From IMG/VR virus record IMGVR_UViG_3300040801_001224, positions 186,001 to 250,000 of that record: DNA of 64,000 bases; one strand, 5' to 3'. Made by a program: the position numbers and the translations under genes. Of the stretch, positions 396 to 31,039 are shown one piece after another. Every line of letters begins with the position of its first letter. The first letter of the stretch is position 1. The notes beneath the pieces are model-generated. The model saw only the letters and a list, made by a program, of their open reading frames with translations, was not told where the DNA came from and did no database searches.

Positions 396-704
396 ATGAG
401 TGCCACTGACGTAATCGAAAAAACTGAAGCAAAAGAAGAAGTTGAAGTAAAAGAGCCTGGAAAATATAAGGTTGTTCTACACAATGATGACAAGACAACA
501 TTCGACTTTGTTATCTTTATATTAACTGAAGTATTTAATAAGTCAATGAAAGAAGCGGCTGAAATAACCATGTTTGTCCACGAAAAAGGCCAAGCAGTCG
601 CAGGTATTTACACGTATCAGATTGCAGAGATGAAAATTGACGAGTCGATTACCCTGGCAAGACGTGCCGGATTCCCACTCACACTGACCGCTGAAGAGCT
701 CTAA
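396..704 (+). CDS. clpS: ATP-dependent Clp protease adaptor ClpS
   Basis: YKVVLHNDDKTTFDFVIFILTEVF...ITMFVHEKGQAVAGIY...FPLTLTAE. Confidence 0.95.
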   Translation: MSATDVIEKTEAKEEVEVKEPGKYKVVLHNDDKTTFDFVIFILTEVFNKSMKEAAEITMFVHEKGQAVAGIYTYQIAEMKIDESITLARRAGFPLTLTAEEL

Positions 705-7267: not shown

Positions 7268-7885
7268 ATGGGATTAGTTCCAATGGTAGTAGAGAAAACA
7301 TCACAGGGTGAGCGTTCTTTCGATATTTTTAGTAGGTTATTGAAAGAGAGGACGGTTTTCTTTACAGGTGAGGTACGTGATGAGATGGCCAATCTAATTG
7401 TAGCACAGTTACTTTATTTAGAAGCCGAAGCACCCGAAGCAGACATTACTCTTTATATTAACAGCCCAGGCGGATCGGTGAGTGCAGGCCTCGCTGTATA
7501 TGACACGATGCAATTTATTAAGCCAGACGTTTCTACAATCGTAGCAGGCCAAGCATGTTCGATGGGTTCTTTCATTGCTCAAGCAGGCGCACCTGGCAAG
7601 CGCATGGTATTGCCACAGTCAAGAACAATGGTTCACCGTGTTAGCTCAGGCACACCGGCTACTCGAGGCTCAGTCCACGTGATGGAACATGAATTTGAAG
7701 ACGCCAGGCGCTCATTTGAAGAGTCAAAGCGTGTTAATGAGATCCTTACTCAATTGTACGCCAAGCACAACACAAAAGGTCAGACTTACGAACAGTTGCT
7801 TGAAACCCTTAAATTTGACACCTACCTTTCGGCACAAGAAGCAGTCGACTTTGGGTTAGCTGATCAGATTATCACAAATCGATAA
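7268..7885 (+). CDS. clpP: ATP-dependent Clp protease proteolytic subunit
   Basis: [31 protein letters not shown], catalytic S (GQACSMG), H (MVHR), D (FDTYL). Confidence 0.97.
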
Positions 7886-26026: not shown

Positions 26027-26442
26027 AATTATTAACGATTATCCTTGCCACATTATTCCTGTCGGGTTGTGCTATATTTGGGCCAGACATTCCGCCTAAT
26101 GCGACAGTCCAGACGCAAGAGTTTACCCTTGTTCCACCGAAACAAACACGCCCCATAACGATGAAGGAAGTAGAATTTAATGTCATAAGTAAGCAAGTAT
26201 TCATAGAAACGCTTATGGAAAAGTACAAGCTGGATTTGACTATTGCTGAAGACATTGCTAGTGAAGTATTTGAGGAAGACATTTCACTTTTCACAGTTAA
26301 CGCACAGTACTATGGTAATTTAGGCGAGAACATGCAGGAAATCATACGTTTCATCAAACAACAACAAAACGCACTCCAATATTATCGTGACAATGTGCCT
26401 GAACCTAAAGAGGGAACAGATACAGAGTCCGAAAATGAATGA
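26023..26442 (+). CDS. Outer-membrane spanin lipoprotein (Rz1-like)
   Basis: Lipobox LFLSG|C; directly after the i-spanin candidate. Confidence 0.75.
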   Translation: MKLLTIILATLFLSGCAIFGPDIPPNATVQTQEFTLVPPKQTRPITMKEVEFNVISKQVFIETLMEKYKLDLTIAEDIASEVFEEDISLFTVNAQYYGNLGENMQEIIRFIKQQQNALQYYRDNVPEPKEGTDTESENE

Positions 26443-27166
26443 TTACTATGACATATTGGGTGTAAGTAGAACTGCTAGTAAAAATGAAATTAAAATAGCT
26501 TATAAAAAGCTTGCGTCAATATACCACCCGGATAAAAACTCAGACCCAAGAGCAAAGGACTTTTTTGGATTAATCAAAGAAGCGTATACCACTCTTGGAA
26601 ATGAAAAGAAACGTGAAGCATACGACAAGCCGGCGTATGATGCGATGCTCAAGCACATATTTGACAACGGCCCAGTGTACAGAAAAGTACATGATATTTA
26701 TATTACCCTAGAAGATGCGTACAATGGGTGTAAACGTCCTTTAGGCGATGTCACAGCAGAGATACCACCTGGCGTACTCAACAAAGCACGTATGGCACTG
26801 GGTGATACGCTATATAATGTCAACGTCATAAAGCATGATGTGTTTAAACGCAATAGAGATGATTTGCTATTGGACATTGACATAGACGGTGTAGAAGCAC
26901 TGATGGGTAAGCGAGTTGAGATACATCATTTAAATGGTGAAAAACTCACAGTAACGTTAACAGAAACATTTACCGGCGACCTAATCAGACTAGAGGGCAA
27001 GGGTATGCCTAACCAGCTATCGGGTGAGTACGGCGATTTATACTTAAAGATCACAGTAAACCCAATTGATAAAAACACATTGACAAAGCCACTTATAGAT
27101 GCTATAATAGACGCATACGGTGAAAAAATCTTAGAACCAAGGGTGATAAATGAACCAAGAAATTAA
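26435..27166 (+). CDS. dnaJ: DnaJ/CbpA-class J-domain co-chaperone lacking a zinc finger
   Basis: DYYDILGV..YHPDKN..AY..L; C-terminal LEGKGMP..GDLY. Confidence 0.92.
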   Translation: MNDYYDILGVSRTASKNEIKIAYKKLASIYHPDKNSDPRAKDFFGLIKEAYTTLGNEKKREAYDKPAYDAMLKHIFDNGPVYRKVHDIYITLEDAYNGCKRPLGDVTAEIPPGVLNKARMALGDTLYNVNVIKHDVFKRNRDDLLLDIDIDGVEALMGKRVEIHHLNGEKLTVTLTETFTGDLIRLEGKGMPNQLSGEYGDLYLKITVNPIDKNTLTKPLIDAIIDAYGEKILEPRVINEPRN

Positions 27167-30100
27167 AGAAATACTTGAAAACGCAGTACAAGAAGCAGTA
27201 AACCGCAACCACATGTATGTGACACTTGAACACTTACTGTGGGCCATGCTTAATGATAGTGAAATTAAAGACATTATTGTTAAGATGAAAGGCAACCCTG
27301 CCGCAATCCAGGCTGACGTCCAGTCATATTTGGATAACAATGCTAGTGAACTTGCTACGCCAGACGGTTCACCGGCCACGCCAAAAGAGACAACAGCACT
27401 TCGCAGAGTTTTCCAGAGAATGGGTGCTCATGCGGCTCTAACTAACCAAGAGCAAGATACTGTTGATGGCGGGATGTTGCTTGCCAGCATGTTACAAGAA
27501 TTAAACAGTCACGCAGTAATGTATTTAAATAAAAATGATGTTACACGTGATAAACTTGTGAAACTATTGCGTAAAGAATATGATACACAAAACCCACAAT
27601 CACATGGCGGAATGCCAGGTGAAAATCCTCCAGTAACAGCACAAGATTTTGAGAAGTTTTGTTATAACCTAAACGAGCAATCCAAAGACGGTGACATCGA
27701 TCCTGTTATTGGGCGTGAAACAGAAATTAACAACACCATTGAAATTCTTGCTCGTAAGAAAAAGAACAACGTTATATATGTTGGTGATCCAGGTGTAGGC
27801 AAAACAGCACTTTCAGAAGGCCTAGCTAACATGATCGTAAATGATCAAGTACCAGAAGCACTAAAAGAGAAAGAAGTATACTCGTTAGACTTGGGTGCTA
27901 TGGTTGCAGGTACAAAATACCGTGGTGAATTTGAAGAACGCCTAAAGATGGTTATTGATGAGATAGAAAAGCGTGGTAACGTTATTTTATTCATTGATGA
28001 GATTCACATGTTAATGGGTGCTGGCGCAACGGGTGGCGGTTCAATGGATGCCGCTAACTTACTAAAGCCAGGGTTATCAAAGGGTAAGCTCTTATGTGTA
28101 GGCGCAACAACACATGATGAGTTCCACGAGCATATTGAGAAAGACAAAGCATTACTACGTCGATTTCAACGCATGGATATTGACGAACCAAGTGTAGAGA
28201 ACACAAAGCGTATTTTAAAAGGCCTAAAGCAATACTATGAAGAATTCCATGGTGTTACTTATGAAGATGAAGCACTTGATCTAGCAGTAGATCTAGCAGA
28301 CCGCTATATCAAATCAAAGTTCTTCCCAGACAAAGCCATTGATATTATGGATGCGGCAGGCGCAGTAGCTAAACTCACAAATGTCACAAACGTTGACAAC
28401 GAAGCAGTTAAAGCACAAGCGGCAAAACTAAGTAAAATGCCACTTGACATGATTGACATAAAAGTTAATGATTCTATTGAACATCTTGACAGTAAAGTAA
28501 AAGCAGAAGTTTACGGCCAGGATGAAGCAGTAGATAAAGTTACAGAAGCCATTATGGTTTCTAAAGCAGGGTTACGTGAACCTAACAAGCCAGTTGGTAG
28601 CTTCCTATTCGTAGGTCCTACTGGTACAGGTAAAGCCCAGCCGCTATATTCAAAAATCAAGACACCTACTGGTTGGACAACTATGGGTGAAATTAAAATT
28701 GGCGACAAAGTATCTACGCCAGACGGGAAAAGTGCAAACGTTATAGGCATTTTTCCGCAGGGTGAAAAAGATATATATGAGATAACATTTGCCGATGGGA
28801 GAAAGGCGCAATCTTGTAAAGAGCATATTTGGAAAGTATATAATAAGCATTGGCGACACAAATGGAAGAATATGACGCTCGAAGAGATTATGGAACTTTC
28901 AGAAGGTGTCAGAAAAGAATTGTATATTCCCCTTATTTTTAATGATAATGCTCCTGATGCTGATTTGCCGCTACCGGCATACTTCATGGGCGTTATGTTA
29001 GGAGATGGTTGCCTAATAAACAATAATTTTTCTACCGCAGATGAGGAAATTGTCGAATACATAAAAGAAAATTTACACGAAGGGTATGACGTTAATCGTA
29101 GAAATAAATATGACTATGCTATTACTTCTACAAAGACTAAAGCTGAAATTCAGTCGTTAAATAGCAGACAGATTCCGTGGAATCATTATGTCGAAATATT
29201 TAAAGATTTAGATTTACGTGGAAAGCGATCGCATGAAAAATTTATTCCCGAAATTTACAAAAATGGGTCGGTATCGCAAAGAATACAGCTTATTCAAGGC
29301 CTTATGGATACTGATGGCGAAGTTGACAAAAAGACAGGATCGCTGTCATATACTACTGTGAGCGAACAATTATGTGATGACTTTGTTGAAATTGTTCGCT
29401 CTATTGGGGGCATAGCTAAGGTAAGAACTAAAATCCCAACGTACACATACAATGGAGAAAAACGCCAAGGAAAATTGGCATATACAGTTCGGATCAGGTA
29501 TCCAGAACCAAGAAAATTAGTGTCTTTATCTAGAAAAGTGAATAGAACTCCTGAAAATTATCAGTATAAAGATTTGAAACTTCGTATAGAAACTATAGCG
29601 AAGGTAACCCCTGCAGAAGCACAGTGTATTATGATTGACCATGTAGACCATTTGTATATCACAGATGAGTATGTTGTTACGCACAACACATACCTATGTA
29701 AAAAATTAGCAGAACATACGGGTGCTAAGTTATTGAGATACGACATGAGTGAGTACCAGGAAAAACACACCGTGTCAAAGTTAATCGGTGCGCCCCCAGG
29801 TTATGTTGGTCATGGCGAGGGCAAAAATGGCGAAGGGCAACTTATTCAAGAAGTCGAAGCCAATCCTAACTGTATATTGCTACTCGACGAAGTTGAAAAA
29901 GCGGCAAGTGAAGTAACTACTATCCTACTACAAGTAATGGATGACGGCAGGCTTACATCGAGCAAGGGTAAGACCGTAGACTTCACAAATGTGACGCTTA
30001 TACTGACCTCGAACCTGGGTGCCGCCGATTCTGAACGCAAGCGTATTGGCTTTGGTGATCAAGCAAATACAATGGCATATGATGAAGCACTTAAAAAGCA

Positions 30101-30485
30101 CTTCACGCCAGAGTTCCGTAACCGTTTAGACGCAGTAGTACAGTTTAACAAACTTGAGGATCGTGAGATTAAGATGATTGTTAACGCTGAACTAAGCGAT
30201 TTACAGAATACTATCTTGGAACAACATATCACAATGTCTTACACGCCTAAGGCACGTACAATGTTGGCAAGAGAAGGCTTTGATGAGCTGATGGGCGCAA
30301 GACCTCTGAAACGTCTTATCCAGGATAAGATTAAAAAGCCTTTGAGTAAGGAAATACTGTTCAGTGATTTGGGACAGCATGGCGGAATTGTTAAAGTTGA
30401 TTATGTCAATGATGACTTTGTTCTGCAAGTGGCAAAGATAAATCCACCACCAGCAGAACCAACGGTCGCTAACGCTGAAGCCTAG
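27150..30485 (+). CDS. clpA: ClpA-type AAA+ unfoldase with an intein in the NBD2 Walker A motif
   Basis: NBD1 GDPGVGKT/FIDEIH; NBD2 GPTGTGK|T, LLDEVEK; ClpP-docking IGF loop; no ClpB M-domain. Confidence 0.93.
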   Translation: MNQEIKEILENAVQEAVNRNHMYVTLEHLLWAMLNDSEIKDIIVKMKGNPAAIQADVQSYLDNNASELATPDGSPATPKETTALRRVFQRMGAHAALTNQEQDTVDGGMLLASMLQELNSHAVMYLNKNDVTRDKLVKLLRKEYDTQNPQSHGGMPGENPPVTAQDFEKFCYNLNEQSKDGDIDPVIGRETEINNTIEILARKKKNNVIYVGDPGVGKTALSEGLANMIVNDQVPEALKEKEVYSLDLGAMVAGTKYRGEFEERLKMVIDEIEKRGNVILFIDEIHMLMGAGATGGGSMDAANLLKPGLSKGKLLCVGATTHDEFHEHIEKDKALLRRFQRMDIDEPSVENTKRILKGLKQYYEEFHGVTYEDEALDLAVDLADRYIKSKFFPDKAIDIMDAAGAVAKLTNVTNVDNEAVKAQAAKLSKMPLDMIDIKVNDSIEHLDSKVKAEVYGQDEAVDKVTEAIMVSKAGLREPNKPVGSFLFVGPTGTGKAQPLYSKIKTPTGWTTMGEIKIGDKVSTPDGKSANVIGIFPQGEKDIYEITFADGRKAQSCKEHIWKVYNKHWRHKWKNMTLEEIMELSEGVRKELYIPLIFNDNAPDADLPLPAYFMGVMLGDGCLINNNFSTADEEIVEYIKENLHEGYDVNRRNKYDYAITSTKTKAEIQSLNSRQIPWNHYVEIFKDLDLRGKRSHEKFIPEIYKNGSVSQRIQLIQGLMDTDGEVDKKTGSLSYTTVSEQLCDDFVEIVRSIGGIAKVRTKIPTYTYNGEKRQGKLAYTVRIRYPEPRKLVSLSRKVNRTPENYQYKDLKLRIETIAKVTPAEAQCIMIDHVDHLYITDEYVVTHNTYLCKKLAEHTGAKLLRYDMSEYQEKHTVSKLIGAPPGYVGHGEGKNGEGQLIQEVEANPNCILLLDEVEKAASEVTTILLQVMDDGRLTSSKGKTVDFTNVTLILTSNLGAADSERKRIGFGDQANTMAYDEALKKHFTPEFRNRLDAVVQFNKLEDREIKMIVNAELSDLQNTILEQHITMSYTPKARTMLAREGFDELMGARPLKRLIQDKIKKPLSKEILFSDLGQHGGIVKVDYVNDDFVLQVAKINPPPAEPTVANAEA
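28635..29687 (+). mobile_element. 351-aa class-3 type intein with LAGLIDADG homing endonuclease
   Basis: Starts AQPL, ends VVTHN before +1 Thr; W (HIW), C (AQCI) and T (VTHN) triplet; LGDG and LMDTDG motifs. Confidence 0.9.
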
Positions 30486-31039
30486 TATCCTAGGCCTGAG
30501 AAAGTACCATGTTTGTTAATCGTCAGCACTTGCTGGCGATTTTCATCATGCTGTGTGTAACTGACATGAACCCAGCCCATATTAGGATCACCGTCTGGAT
30601 TCTTTTCTTCATCATCTGGATCATACCAGAATTCTAGAATAAGTTGATCAAATACTAGGTTATCCTTTATCCACTCAGCTAGTTCATAGTTACTGACACC
30701 ATAAATTTCAATGTCTGCCGCTTCACCCTTTGTGTGCTGTGAACGATCACTTGATCCTAATTTACGGTTTAACTCTAAACAACGAAACCCTGAGTTAACG
30801 TTTACTGAGCGTCCGAAGTGATCACGAACTGGCTGTAATACGTTTTCTGCAAGTGCTATCATGTTATCGACTTCATCCTCATAAGGTGTGTTGTCGATGC
30901 CATGTCTCGCCGCTGTCTGACTCTTAAGCATTTCGCCTAATGTAAAATTTGCTGATAATCTCATAGTTCTATCAATCTCCTTTGTGTGTATTTCAGGCTG
31001 AAATAAGCCTTTGAGTAATTTTCTTAAAAATTCTATCAT
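30482..31039 (-). CDS. Peptidase M15 endolysin (Zn D-Ala-D-Ala/L-Ala-D-Glu peptidase fold)
   Basis: LSANFTLGE, VNSGFRC, SQHTKGEAAD, WVHVS; late box on minus strand at 31044-31051. Confidence 0.9.
   Translation of the reverse strand: MIEFLRKLLKGLFQPEIHTKEIDRTMRLSANFTLGEMLKSQTAARHGIDNTPYEDEVDNMIALAENVLQPVRDHFGRSVNVNSGFRCLELNRKLGSSDRSQHTKGEAADIEIYGVSNYELAEWIKDNLVFDQLILEFWYDPDDEEKNPDGDPNMGWVHVSYTQHDENRQQVLTINKHGTFSGLGY

What the first reader, a model, noticed from the sequence alone, without database searches (positions are those of the whole stretch)
28635..29687. Ala-start class-3 intein with LAGLIDADG endonuclease in the second Walker A of ClpA
Seen: GPTGTGK|AQPL...VVTHN|TYLCKK. The intein is 351 aa, has no N-terminal nucleophile, shows the Trp/Cys/Thr triplet (HIW, AQCI, VTHN) and two LAGLIDADG-like motifs, and is AT-richer than its flanks. 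Established: class-3 inteins use the block-F Cys as nucleophile, and P-loop K|T sites are intein hot spots in replication ATPases. A Clp unfoldase is an unusual host. Inference: Cys-dependent splicing could make ClpA activity redox- or stress-conditional.
Basis: partly seen in the sequence, partly recalled or inferred. Interest (0 to 1): 0.62.

Follow-up and report, generated by a model that had tools for sequence, protein, structure and literature searches.

The report
Class-3 intein in jumbo-phage ClpA
A jumbo phage's ClpA unfoldase gene is interrupted, exactly inside its second ATP-binding loop, by a typical mobile class-3 intein that must splice itself out before ClpA can work; the kind is well known, and only this host protein seems not to have been described before.

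Summary
Window 27150-30485 (+) encodes a 1111-aa ClpA. Its D2 Walker A is split (GPTGTGK|T) by a 351-aa insert at 28635-29687. The insert has every sequence hallmark of a class-3 intein: Ala1, His-B10, Trp-B12, Cys-F4, Thr-G5, His-Asn, Thr+1. These residues are invariant in 142 relatives. It also holds a PI-SceI-like LAGLIDADG endonuclease (AF2 pLDDT 93; Foldseek E 2.5e-19).

The genome is a 328-kb uncultured jumbo phage that also encodes ClpS, ClpP and DnaJ. The closest ClpA orthologue (90% identity) and a marine-sediment contig carry the precise empty site GTGK|TYLCKK. The element is therefore sporadically distributed, as a mobile element would be.

It belongs to a large family of class-3 inteins that target P-loops. 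Hosts include ClpA D1 and D2, ClpX, ClpB, PhoH, SF2 helicases, MoxR and terminases. Homing of class-3 inteins to P-loops of non-homologous proteins is already published.

- "Unusual host" holds for the literature I could search, for 50,697 deposited phages (none) and for cellular genomes (2 of the 80 best loci, both at D1). It does not hold for metagenomes.
- "AT-richer" is not significant (z = -1.2).
- Redox control is untested. The disulfide partner Cys of the M. smegmatis precedent is Ile here; a block-B Cys61 is a candidate substitute.

Verdict: a new member of a known kind.

The parts
27150..30485 (+). clpA precursor ORF (1111 aa with stop codon): Clp_N, D1 AAA, AAA_lid_9, D2 AAA_2 split by the intein, ClpB_D2-small
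   Evidence: TIGR02639 ClpA E 5.5e-257 in two stretches. phrog_4871 E 2.5e-243.
27150..28634 (+). N-extein (495 aa), ending in GPTGTGK of the D2 Walker A (28614-28634). Holds an intact D1 Walker A GDPGVGKT (27783-27806) and D1 Walker B ILFIDEIH (27984-28007).
   Evidence: 90% identical to the intein-free P0123.
28635..29687 (+). Intein, 351 aa, from Ala1 to Asn351
28635..28676 (+). Splicing block A (AQPLYSKIKTPTGW). Position 1 is Ala, so there is no N-terminal nucleophile.
   Evidence: Position 1 is Ala in 121 of 142 relatives, Pro in 13 and Cys in 4.
28797..28838 (+). Splicing block B (GRKAQSCKEHIWKV): Cys61 at B7, His64 at B10, Trp66 at B12
   Evidence: H64 and W66 are in 142 of 142 relatives, C61 in 120 of 142. 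HMMER aligns it to the HQW of the class-3 DnaB inteins 6rix and 6bs8.
28980..29015 (+). LAGLIDADG motif 1 (endonuclease block C), catalytic Asp124
   Evidence: D124 in 135 of 142 relatives. Pfam LAGLIDADG_3 and Hom_end.
29232..29261 (+). Endonuclease block D with invariant Lys202 (KFIPEIY)
   Evidence: K202 is invariant; P205 and Y208 are in at least 90% of the 29 rows of A1.
29289..29321 (+). LAGLIDADG motif 2 (block E), Asp225 and Asp227
   Evidence: D225 in 140 of 142 and D227 in 138 of 142 relatives. Both are invariant in A1.
29616..29663 (+). Splicing block F (EAQCIMIDHVDHLYIT). Cys331 at F4 is the predicted initiating nucleophile.
   Evidence: C331 in 142 of 142 relatives. Aligned to the Cys of VRCVEVD in 6rix.
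29667..29690 (+). Splicing block G (YVVTHN) with Thr349 (G5), His350 and Asn351, plus the Thr+1 codon (29688-29690), which is the Walker A Thr
   Evidence: T349, H350 and N351 in 142 of 142 relatives. The +1 residue is Thr or Ser at nearly every site listed; one of three inteins in P0119 has Cys.
29688..30482 (+). C-extein (265 aa): rest of D2 with pore loop GAPPGYVG (29787-29810), Walker B ILLLDEVEKA (29874-29903), the IGF ClpP-docking loop (30042-30056) and the D2-small domain
   Evidence: Aligned to E. coli ClpA 6uqe at E 2.3e-62, with IGF opposite IGL.
26387..27166 (+). DnaJ-like co-chaperone gene that overlaps the clpA start by 17 nt. It is conserved upstream of clpA in related phage contigs.
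   Evidence: Synteny in L004-L007, L133 and L134.
7268..7885 (+). Phage clpP, the likely proteolytic partner of the spliced ClpA
   Evidence: PF00574 E 9.7e-63. Ser, His and Asp motifs are present.
396..704 (+). Phage clpS, the adaptor for the ClpA N-domain
   Evidence: PF02617 E 1.3e-27.

Best explanation
This is a mobile class-3 intein with an apparently intact LAGLIDADG homing endonuclease. It sits between Lys495 and Thr of the D2 Walker A (GPTGTGK|T) of the ClpA unfoldase of an uncultured 328-kb jumbo phage.

Shown:
- The insertion is precise.
- The class-3 signature is complete.
- The fold combines a HINT domain with a PI-SceI-like endonuclease.
- Empty-site alleles exist in close relatives.
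- It belongs to a large intein family that sits almost only in P-loops of unrelated ATPases.

Inferred mechanism:
1. The 1111-aa precursor cannot bind or hydrolyse ATP in D2.
2. Cys331 (block F, position 4) attacks the Lys495-Ala1 peptide bond and forms a block-F branched thioester.
3. The N-extein passes to the hydroxyl of Thr+1.
4. Asn351 cyclises, helped by His350, and releases the intein.
5. An O-to-N shift restores GPTGTGKT and yields a 760-aa ClpA. That ClpA can dock on the phage ClpP through its IGF loop.
6. The freed intein, as an endonuclease, cuts intein-free clpA alleles of co-infecting related phages at the P-loop-coding DNA. Repair copies the intein in.

Over longer times the family also jumps between P-loops of different ATPases. 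Its main 'function' is its own spread. Any regulatory effect on ClpA would be secondary.
For: Coordinates and flanks.

ClpA identity:
- Family scans.
- C-extein aligned to E. coli ClpA.

Class-3 signature:
- In 142 family members Ala1 is present in 121. His64, Trp66, Cys331, Thr349, His350 and Asn351 are present in all 142.
- The same residues are invariant or near-invariant in 29 viral-contig sequences.
- The published definition is no A1 nucleophile plus Trp, Cys and Thr at B12, F4 and G5 (PMC5050341; PMC4031507).

Homology to solved class-3 DnaB inteins: 6rix E 6.7e-11 and 6bs8 E 2.1e-8.

Structure: the AF2 model has pLDDT 93.3 and pTM 0.91. Its best PDB match is PI-SceI at E 2.5e-19 and TMq 0.78, and its HINT part matches 'the class 3 DnaB intein' 6bs8.

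Endonuclease residues D124, K202, D225 and D227 are conserved.

Mobility:
- The closest orthologue P0123 (90% identity over the N-extein, same gene order) is intein-free, with the identical joined sequence.
- A marine-sediment contig at about 95-98% identity skips exactly 1053 nt.
- On the intein tree the host label needs 29-30 changes. The minimum is 10 and the shuffled mean is 94.

Other support:
- Homing to P-loops of non-homologous proteins is published for class-3 inteins shared with phages (PMC10710043).
- Both junctions are covered by independent contigs at 100% identity.
Against: - No experiment shows that this precursor splices, that Cys331 is the nucleophile, or that the endonuclease cuts.
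- Class assignment rests on sequence signature and homology.
- Four of the 142 relatives start with Cys and 13 with Pro, so position 1 is not uniform in the family.
- The intein is no more conserved than its exteins between the window and P0008 (72% against 65% and 70%). That comparison does not by itself show recent transfer. The pattern could be one old gain followed by precise losses.
- The tree is a FastTree tree with many weakly supported forks.
Confidence: 0.85

Rival explanations
1. Conditional protein splicing. The intein has been co-opted as a post-translational switch. Oxidation, zinc or another stress signal reversibly blocks Cys331, possibly through a disulfide or metal site with the block-B Cys61. 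This holds the phage ClpA, and so phage ClpAP proteolysis, inactive until conditions or the timing of infection are right.
For: - The M. smegmatis class-3 DnaBi1, also in a P-loop, is reversibly inhibited by H2O2 through a Cys48-Cys118 disulfide (PMC6195587). The abstracts of PMC7360933 and PMC8557812 report inhibition by zinc and reactive chlorine.
- This intein uses the same catalytic Cys position.
- A second Cys sits at B7 beside the scissile bond in 120 of 142 relatives.
- In the wider family Cys47 and Cys61 are mutually exclusive: 10 rows against 11 rows, with no overlap. This fits a second Cys that is usually kept but can move.
- D2 carries the P-loop, so the precursor should be inactive in D2.
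Against: - The residue equivalent to DnaBi1 Cys48 is Ile47 here.
- I could not measure the Cys61-Cys331 distance, because the tool returns no coordinates.
- Five of the 29 rows of A1 have no second Cys at positions 47, 60 or 61.
- The closest orthologues do without the intein, so it is dispensable for the phage.
- The same intein family sits in dozens of unrelated ATPases. That fits a selfish element better than a ClpA-specific regulator.
Confidence: 0.1
2. A splicing-dead or decaying insertion. The intein no longer splices, so this clpA is effectively a pseudogene, or it yields only cleavage products.
For: - Splicing has not been tested.
- Thr+1 is a weaker nucleophile than Cys.
- Related phages live without the three genes next to clpA, and others without the intein. 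This shows the region is plastic.
Against: - The 3336-nt frame is fully open.
- Every residue known to be needed is present and matches the family consensus. These are H-B10, W-B12, C-F4, T-G5, H-G6, N-G7 and Thr+1.
- The ClpA exteins keep Walker A and B, the pore loops and the IGF loop.
- The partners ClpP and ClpS are intact.
- Thr or Ser at +1 is the rule at nearly every family site listed.
Confidence: 0.04
3. A class-2 intein (Mja KlbA type), or a class-1 intein that merely lost its first nucleophile. Splicing would then start with a direct attack of the +1 residue on the N-terminal junction, without a block-F intermediate.
For: Ala1 is shared with class-2 inteins.
Against: Per PMC4031507, class-2 inteins are KlbA orthologues with Ser at G6, Asp at F4, Thr at B7 and Cys+1. 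This intein has His at G6, Cys at F4, Cys at B7 and Thr+1. Its solved relatives by sequence are class-3 DnaB inteins.
Confidence: 0.01

Closest known systems
Mycobacterial class-3 DnaB inteins in the DnaB P-loop (M. smegmatis DnaBi1, PDB 6bs8; MchDnaB-1, PDB 6rix/6riy)
   Same: - Ala1 start with His-x-Trp in block B, Cys at F4 and Thr-His-Asn at the end.
- Inserted after the P-loop Lys, with Ser or Thr at +1.
- Direct sequence homology at E 6.7e-11 and 2.1e-8 and structural matches.
   Different: - Those are mini-inteins of 139-146 aa without an endonuclease, in a bacterial replicative helicase.
- This one is 351 aa with an apparently intact LAGLIDADG domain, in a phage ClpA.
- Block B7 is Asp there (DxxH) and Cys here (CxxH).
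- The DnaBi1 redox partner Cys48 is Ile47 here.
Phage terminase and helicase P-loop inteins (mycobacteriophage TerL1-a 'classic P-loop insertion'; PHROG 19299 and 36964 terminase inteins; SF2, SNF2 and 'DarB-like' helicase inteins of jumbo phages such as PhiPA3, SA002 and N1M2)
   Same: - Same intein family: phrog_19299 E 4.4e-33 over the whole intein.
- 864 deposited phage records hold relatives at up to 44.5% identity.
- Same K|T or K|S insertion point and the same LAGLIDADG endonuclease.
   Different: The host protein differs. None of the 50,697 deposited phage records has it in ClpA: no record covers 80% or more of the precursor.
Anaeramoeba / phage 'cluster 1' class-3 inteins that home to P-loops of non-homologous proteins (PMC10710043)
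   Same: Class-3 signature, exclusive P-loop location, and presence in many unrelated ATPases. This implies non-allelic spread (compared).
   Different: Those were described in a eukaryote's nuclear genes. I did not compare the sequences directly. Clp proteins are not mentioned in that paper (0 occurrences).
PI-SceI (yeast VMA1 intein, PDB 1lwt/1vde)
   Same: Bifunctional architecture: a HINT splicing domain plus a two-motif LAGLIDADG endonuclease. It is the best structural match (E 2.5e-19, TMq 0.78) and has sequence similarity over the endonuclease part (E 7e-5).
   Different: PI-SceI is a class-1 intein (Cys1) of 454 aa with only about 16% identity. Its host is the V-ATPase catalytic subunit A (VMA1).
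Chlamydomonas eugametos ClpP intein
   Same: It is the only Clp-system intein named in the surveys I could read (PMC4760082).
   Different: It lies in the peptidase ClpP of a chloroplast, not in the unfoldase, and not at a P-loop. The phage's own ClpP here has no intein.

Membership tests
Class-3 intein | No Cys, Ser or Thr nucleophile at intein position 1 | tested here: met
   Position 1 is Ala. It is Ala in 121 of 142 relatives.
Class-3 intein | Trp at block B position 12, two residues after His B10 | tested here: met
   KEH64-I-W66. H64 and W66 are in 142 of 142 relatives and align to the HQW of 6rix and 6bs8.
Class-3 intein | Cys at block F position 4 | tested here: met
   AQC331IMID. C331 is in 142 of 142 relatives and aligns to the Cys of VRCVEVD in 6rix.
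Class-3 intein | Thr at block G position 5, followed by His-Asn and a +1 nucleophile | tested here: met
   VVT349-H350-N351|T. All three are in 142 of 142 relatives. The +1 residue is Thr or Ser at nearly every family site listed.
Class-3 intein | Splicing goes through a block-F branched thioester and is abolished by mutating Cys F4 | not testable with these tools
   This needs expression and mutagenesis. The mechanism is inferred from homologues (PMC4031507, PMC6195587).
Intein (HINT domain) in general | In-frame insertion whose removal restores the conserved host sequence; HINT fold | tested here: met
   The intein-free orthologue reads GTGK|TYLCKK, identical to the joined flanks. A contig in X4 skips exactly 1053 nt. 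The model matches intein and hedgehog HINT structures.
LAGLIDADG homing endonuclease (intein-borne, PI-SceI type) | Two LAGLIDADG motifs, each with a catalytic acidic residue, plus the block D Lys | tested here: met
   D124, D227 (with D225) and K202 are conserved. Pfam LAGLIDADG_3 E 1.1e-6 and Hom_end E 1.5e-4.
LAGLIDADG homing endonuclease (intein-borne, PI-SceI type) | Endonuclease fold | tested here: met
   AF2 pLDDT 93.3. PI-SceI TMq 0.78; I-DmoI matches over the endonuclease part.
LAGLIDADG homing endonuclease (intein-borne, PI-SceI type) | Site-specific cleavage of the intein-free allele | not testable with these tools
   Only indirect support: empty and occupied alleles coexist in one phage lineage.
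ClpA (Hsp100 class I unfoldase that partners ClpP) | Clp_N domain, two AAA+ modules (D1 AAA, D2 AAA_2) and D2-small, without the ClpB middle domain | tested here: met
   Pfam architecture. TIGR02639 E 5.5e-257, 854.7 bits. This is below the 993-bit cut-off, and the match is split in two by the intein. The exteins total 760 aa, like the 753-759-aa intein-free orthologues.
ClpA (Hsp100 class I unfoldase that partners ClpP) | IG(F/L) loop in D2 for docking on ClpP | tested here: met
   ERKRIGFGDQ aligns to ERKSIGLIHQ of E. coli ClpA.
Class-2 intein (KlbA type) | Ala1 with Ser G6, Asp F4 and Cys+1 (PMC4031507) | tested here: not met
   This intein has His G6, Cys F4 and Thr+1.

The most novel reading that the evidence does not exclude
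In one lineage of uncultured jumbo phages that carry their own DnaJ-ClpA(-ClpP-ClpS) proteostasis module, the Walker A loops of ClpA are recurrent landing sites for class-3 inteins: D1, D2 or both. The intein's catalytic Cys331, paired with the family-specific block-B Cys61, would act as a redox or metal-sensitive gate. The gate would time the activation of phage-encoded ClpAP proteolysis during infection. That would be a post-translational switch on a viral protease machine, not just a parasite.
Probability: 0.08. Interest if true: 0.6.

Novelty: new member of a known kind. Interest (0 to 1): 0.32.

Why it matters
The finding extends the host list of the class-3 inteins that target P-loops to the Hsp100/Clp unfoldases. 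Metagenomic relatives also sit in ClpA D1, ClpX and ClpB. In one jumbo-phage lineage the clpA gene occurs with no intein, with one, or with two.

That lineage offers a natural system for three questions:
- homing between co-infecting phages;
- jumps between P-loops of unrelated ATPases;
- how an AAA+ hexamer copes with unspliced subunits.

For protein engineers it adds a full-length class-3 intein with native Lys(-1) and Thr(+1) junctions and a CxxH block B. It does not change what is known about how inteins work.

Tried and rejected
- **Composition anomaly.** Rejected. The intein's GC is at the 12th percentile of same-size windows (z = -1.16). GC3 is 0.31 against 0.34 for the exteins.
- **Assembly chimera.** Rejected. 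Contigs at 100% identity cross both junctions, and an independent sample has an intein at the same site (P0008).
- **Other inteins in the same genome.** None were found, either with an HMM of this family over all six frames or with Pfam LAGLIDADG_3. I did not scan for inteins without LAGLIDADG domains.
- **A second, intein-free clpA copy in the phage.** None (tblastn).
- **Co-conversion signature near the junctions.** Neither the window against L004 nor the window against L007 shows a clear rise of extein identity next to the insertion.
- **Conservation of the M. smegmatis redox pair.** The Cys48 equivalent is Ile47.
- **RNA evidence.** No RNA run holds the locus, and RNA would say nothing about protein splicing.
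- **Tori & Perler 2011 (PMC3133030).** Not held in the library. I took the class-3 definition from PMC5050341, PMC4031507 and PMC6195587.
- **Cys61-Cys331 distance.** Not measured. The structure tool returns no coordinates.
- **Joined (spliced) ClpA sequence.** I never sent one to a search or folding tool. In scripts the two parts were concatenated only to count length and GC.
- **Large representative-protein search.** Not used, because the word search and the family scans already settled the identity.
Full report
**1. What is there**

The window lies at 186001-250000 of a 328,096-bp virus record with direct terminal repeats, so it comes from an uncultured jumbo phage. The ORF at 27150-30485 (+) encodes 1111 aa.

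Pfam finds Clp_N, AAA (D1), AAA_lid_9, AAA_2 (D2, resuming at residue 846) and ClpB_D2-small. Inside the gap it finds LAGLIDADG_3 and Hom_end. NCBIfam gives ClpA TIGR02639 at E 5.5e-257 in two stretches. PHROGs gives the phage 'ATP-dependent protease' family at E 2.5e-243.

The insert is aa 496-846, which is window 28635-29687 and 351 aa long.

**2. It is a true, precise insertion**

- The closest ClpA in the 5.8-billion-protein collection is P0123. It has 759 aa and is 90% identical over the N-extein. It has no insert and reads SFLFVGPTGTGK|TYLCKKLAEHTG, which is identical to the window's two flanks placed side by side.
- P0123 lies on phage-like contigs with the same gene order: spanin, DnaJ, ClpA ... 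M15 peptidase.
- A marine-sediment contig (run X4, about 95-98% identical in the flanks) skips exactly 1053 nt at this point. It reads GGT AAG|ACG TAC, which is G K|T Y.
- In the microbial-mat runs that hold the phage, separate contigs at 100% identity cross both junctions. The insertion is therefore not an assembly artefact.

**3. Class**

The published definition of class 3 has two parts. There is no nucleophile at position 1, and Trp, Cys and Thr stand at B12, F4 and G5 (PMC5050341; mechanism in PMC4031507, and PMC6195587).

This intein has Ala1, His64-Ile-Trp66, Cys331 in AQCIMID, and Thr349-His350-Asn351 followed by Thr+1. I cut 141 relatives out of the hits and aligned them with the window's intein. 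His64, Trp66, Cys331, Thr349, His350 and Asn351 are present in all 142 sequences, and Ala1 in 121. The same columns are invariant or near-invariant in an independent set of 29 sequences taken by reference from viral contigs.

HMMER aligns the intein to the solved class-3 DnaB inteins 6rix (E 6.7e-11) and 6bs8 (E 2.1e-8), with HxW and the block-F Cys in register.

Class 2 is excluded. It needs Ser at G6, Asp at F4 and Cys+1.

**4. Endonuclease and fold**

Both LAGLIDADG motifs keep their acidic residues (D124; D225 and D227), and the block D Lys202 is invariant. An AlphaFold2 model built on the 29-row alignment has mean pLDDT 93.3 and pTM 0.91. Foldseek ranks PI-SceI first (E 2.5e-19, TMq 0.78). 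The HINT part matches MchDnaB-1 and 'the class 3 DnaB intein from M. smegmatis', and the middle part matches I-DmoI. The endonuclease looks intact, but its activity is not shown.

**5. The family and its habits**

The relatives are numerous.
- The deposited phage collection holds 864 records with a relative at up to 44.5% identity, mostly in SF2 or SNF2 helicases and terminases of jumbo phages.
- The protein collection gives 1894 hits.
- IMG/VR gives 45 loci.

Almost all of them sit after the Lys of a GxxGxGK|T/S P-loop. Hosts include ClpA/B D1 (31 instances among the 141), ClpA/B D2 (18), ClpX (16), PhoH, SF2 helicases, MoxR-type AAA, SbcC-like ATPases, TraD and DnaB. Five ClpA proteins carry two inteins, one in each Walker A (P0003-P0007).

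On a FastTree tree of the 142 inteins the host label needs 29-30 changes. The minimum is 10 and the shuffled mean is 94. Inheritance is therefore mainly site-faithful, with repeated jumps between P-loops. The window's intein is sister to that of P0008 (ClpA D2, 72% identity, support 99), and the next neighbours are two helicase inteins. The query region included 10 extein residues on each side, which favours Clp hosts somewhat.

The literature already describes three of these points:
- the 'classic' K|T P-loop insertion;
- a phage origin of class-3 inteins;
- homing of class-3 inteins to P-loops of non-homologous proteins (PMC10710043).

**6. How unusual is the host?**

I found no paper that reports an intein in ClpA, ClpX or ClpB. 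The 2015 survey names only the chloroplast ClpP intein. In 50,697 deposited phage genomes no record covers 80% or more of the precursor. The ClpAs of PA5oct, RaK2, Atu_ph07 and similar phages are intein-free. In one genome for each of 185,579 prokaryote species, the pattern GWTTMGEI found 149 intein loci. Among the 80 best, only two are in a Clp/Hsp100 protein: Thiorhodospira sibirica ATCC 700588 and a Planctomycetota MAG. Both are at D1.

The three other D2-site carriers whose contigs I inspected lie in the same jumbo-phage lineage, with DnaJ just upstream of clpA and, on L133 and L134, PhoH further upstream. One contig is 346 kb long. The host is therefore new to the literature and rare in reference genomes, but common in metagenomic phage contigs.

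**7. Context**

- The phage encodes ClpS (396-704) and ClpP (7268-7885, with Ser, His and Asp motifs present).
- A DnaJ gene (26387-27166) overlaps the clpA start.
- The C-extein aligns to E. coli ClpA at E 2.3e-62, with IGF opposite the ClpP-docking IGL.
- Walker B motifs and pore loops are intact.
- There is no second clpA and no second intein of this family in the genome.

**8. Mechanism**

Shown: the anatomy, the signature, the fold, the empty-site alleles and the family-wide P-loop targeting.

Inferred from homologues:
1. The precursor lacks a functional D2 P-loop.
2. Cys331 attacks the Lys495-Ala1 bond.
3. The N-extein moves to Thr+1.
4. Asn351 cyclises.
5. An O-to-N shift restores GPTGTGKT.
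6. The free intein cuts empty alleles in co-infecting phages and is copied in by repair.

**9.

The precedent is real. Its specific disulfide partner is not conserved, because DnaBi1 Cys48 aligns to Ile47. However, this subfamily has Cys at B7 (CxxH, 120 of 142), where DnaBi1 has Asp. In the broader set Cys47 and Cys61 never co-occur: 10 rows against 11.

That pattern fits a second Cys that is usually kept but can move. It is only a correlation. Five of the 29 rows have no Cys at positions 47, 60 or 61, and I could not measure distances. I give conditional splicing a probability of about 0.1.

**10. Smaller points**

- 'AT-richer than its flanks' is numerically true (0.370 against 0.415) but unremarkable (z = -1.16).
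The exteins were searched separately by reference.

**11. Verdict**

The interpretation as a class-3 LAGLIDADG intein in the D2 Walker A of ClpA is supported by sequence, homology and fold. The regulatory inference is untested, and its closest precedent is only partly transferable. The finding is a new member of a known kind, of moderate to low interest.

Noticed in passing
window 396-704, 7268-7885, 26387-27166, 27150-30485: The phage carries a full proteostasis set of its own: ClpS, ClpP (catalytic Ser, His and Asp motifs present), a DnaJ-like co-chaperone overlapping the clpA start, and ClpA with an IGF ClpP-docking loop. The DnaJ-ClpA pair is conserved in related contigs.
   Followed up: partly
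L134:8001-12359 (P0003); also P0004-P0007: Related jumbo-phage contigs encode ClpA with two inteins of this family. One is in the D1 Walker A (GEPGVGK|AQPL...THN|TALAEG) and one in the D2 Walker A.
   Followed up: partly
intein aa 47 and 61 (window 28773-28775 and 28815-28817); alignment A1: The M. smegmatis DnaBi1 redox partner Cys48 corresponds to Ile47 here, while block B7 is Cys61 (CxxH, 120 of 142 relatives). In the 29-row viral set, Cys at 47 (10 rows) and Cys at 61 (11 rows) never co-occur. This may mean that a second active-site Cys is usually kept but can move.
   Followed up: partly
window 28632-28634 and 29688-29690 (run X4, record 27): A marine-sediment contig at about 95-98% identity is a precise intein-free allele. 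It has synonymous changes in both codons that flank the insertion point (AAG|ACG instead of AAA|ACA). Whether this affects endonuclease recognition is unknown.
   Followed up: no
P0009, P0010, P0012, P0013, P0021, P0023, P0026 and others: PhoH-family proteins carry two related inteins. One is at the P-loop (GK|AQPL). The other is at a downstream site (LPG|PQPL...THN|T) and starts with Pro.
   Followed up: no
L004:12317-14566 compared with window 30482-31039: The intein-free relative has three extra minus-strand genes between clpA and the M15 peptidase gene: a 260-aa Laminin_G_3 protein, a 208-aa protein and a 268-aa protein. The window lacks all three.
   Followed up: no
L133:375-2402: In a 346-kb related phage contig the thymidylate synthase gene is in two pieces (292 aa and 99 aa) separated by a GIY-YIG ORF. 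It looks like an intron with its own homing endonuclease.
   Followed up: no
L054 (Thiorhodospira sibirica ATCC 700588) and L053 (Planctomycetota MAG), intein at 1501-2574 and 1501-2586: These are the only two of the 80 best cellular-genome loci where this intein sits in a Clp/Hsp100 protein. It is in the D1 Walker A, and D2 is uninterrupted.
   Followed up: partly
window 28511-29062 (-): A 183-aa antisense ORF overlaps the N-extein/intein junction. No evidence was sought, and it is probably a chance ORF.
   Followed up: no
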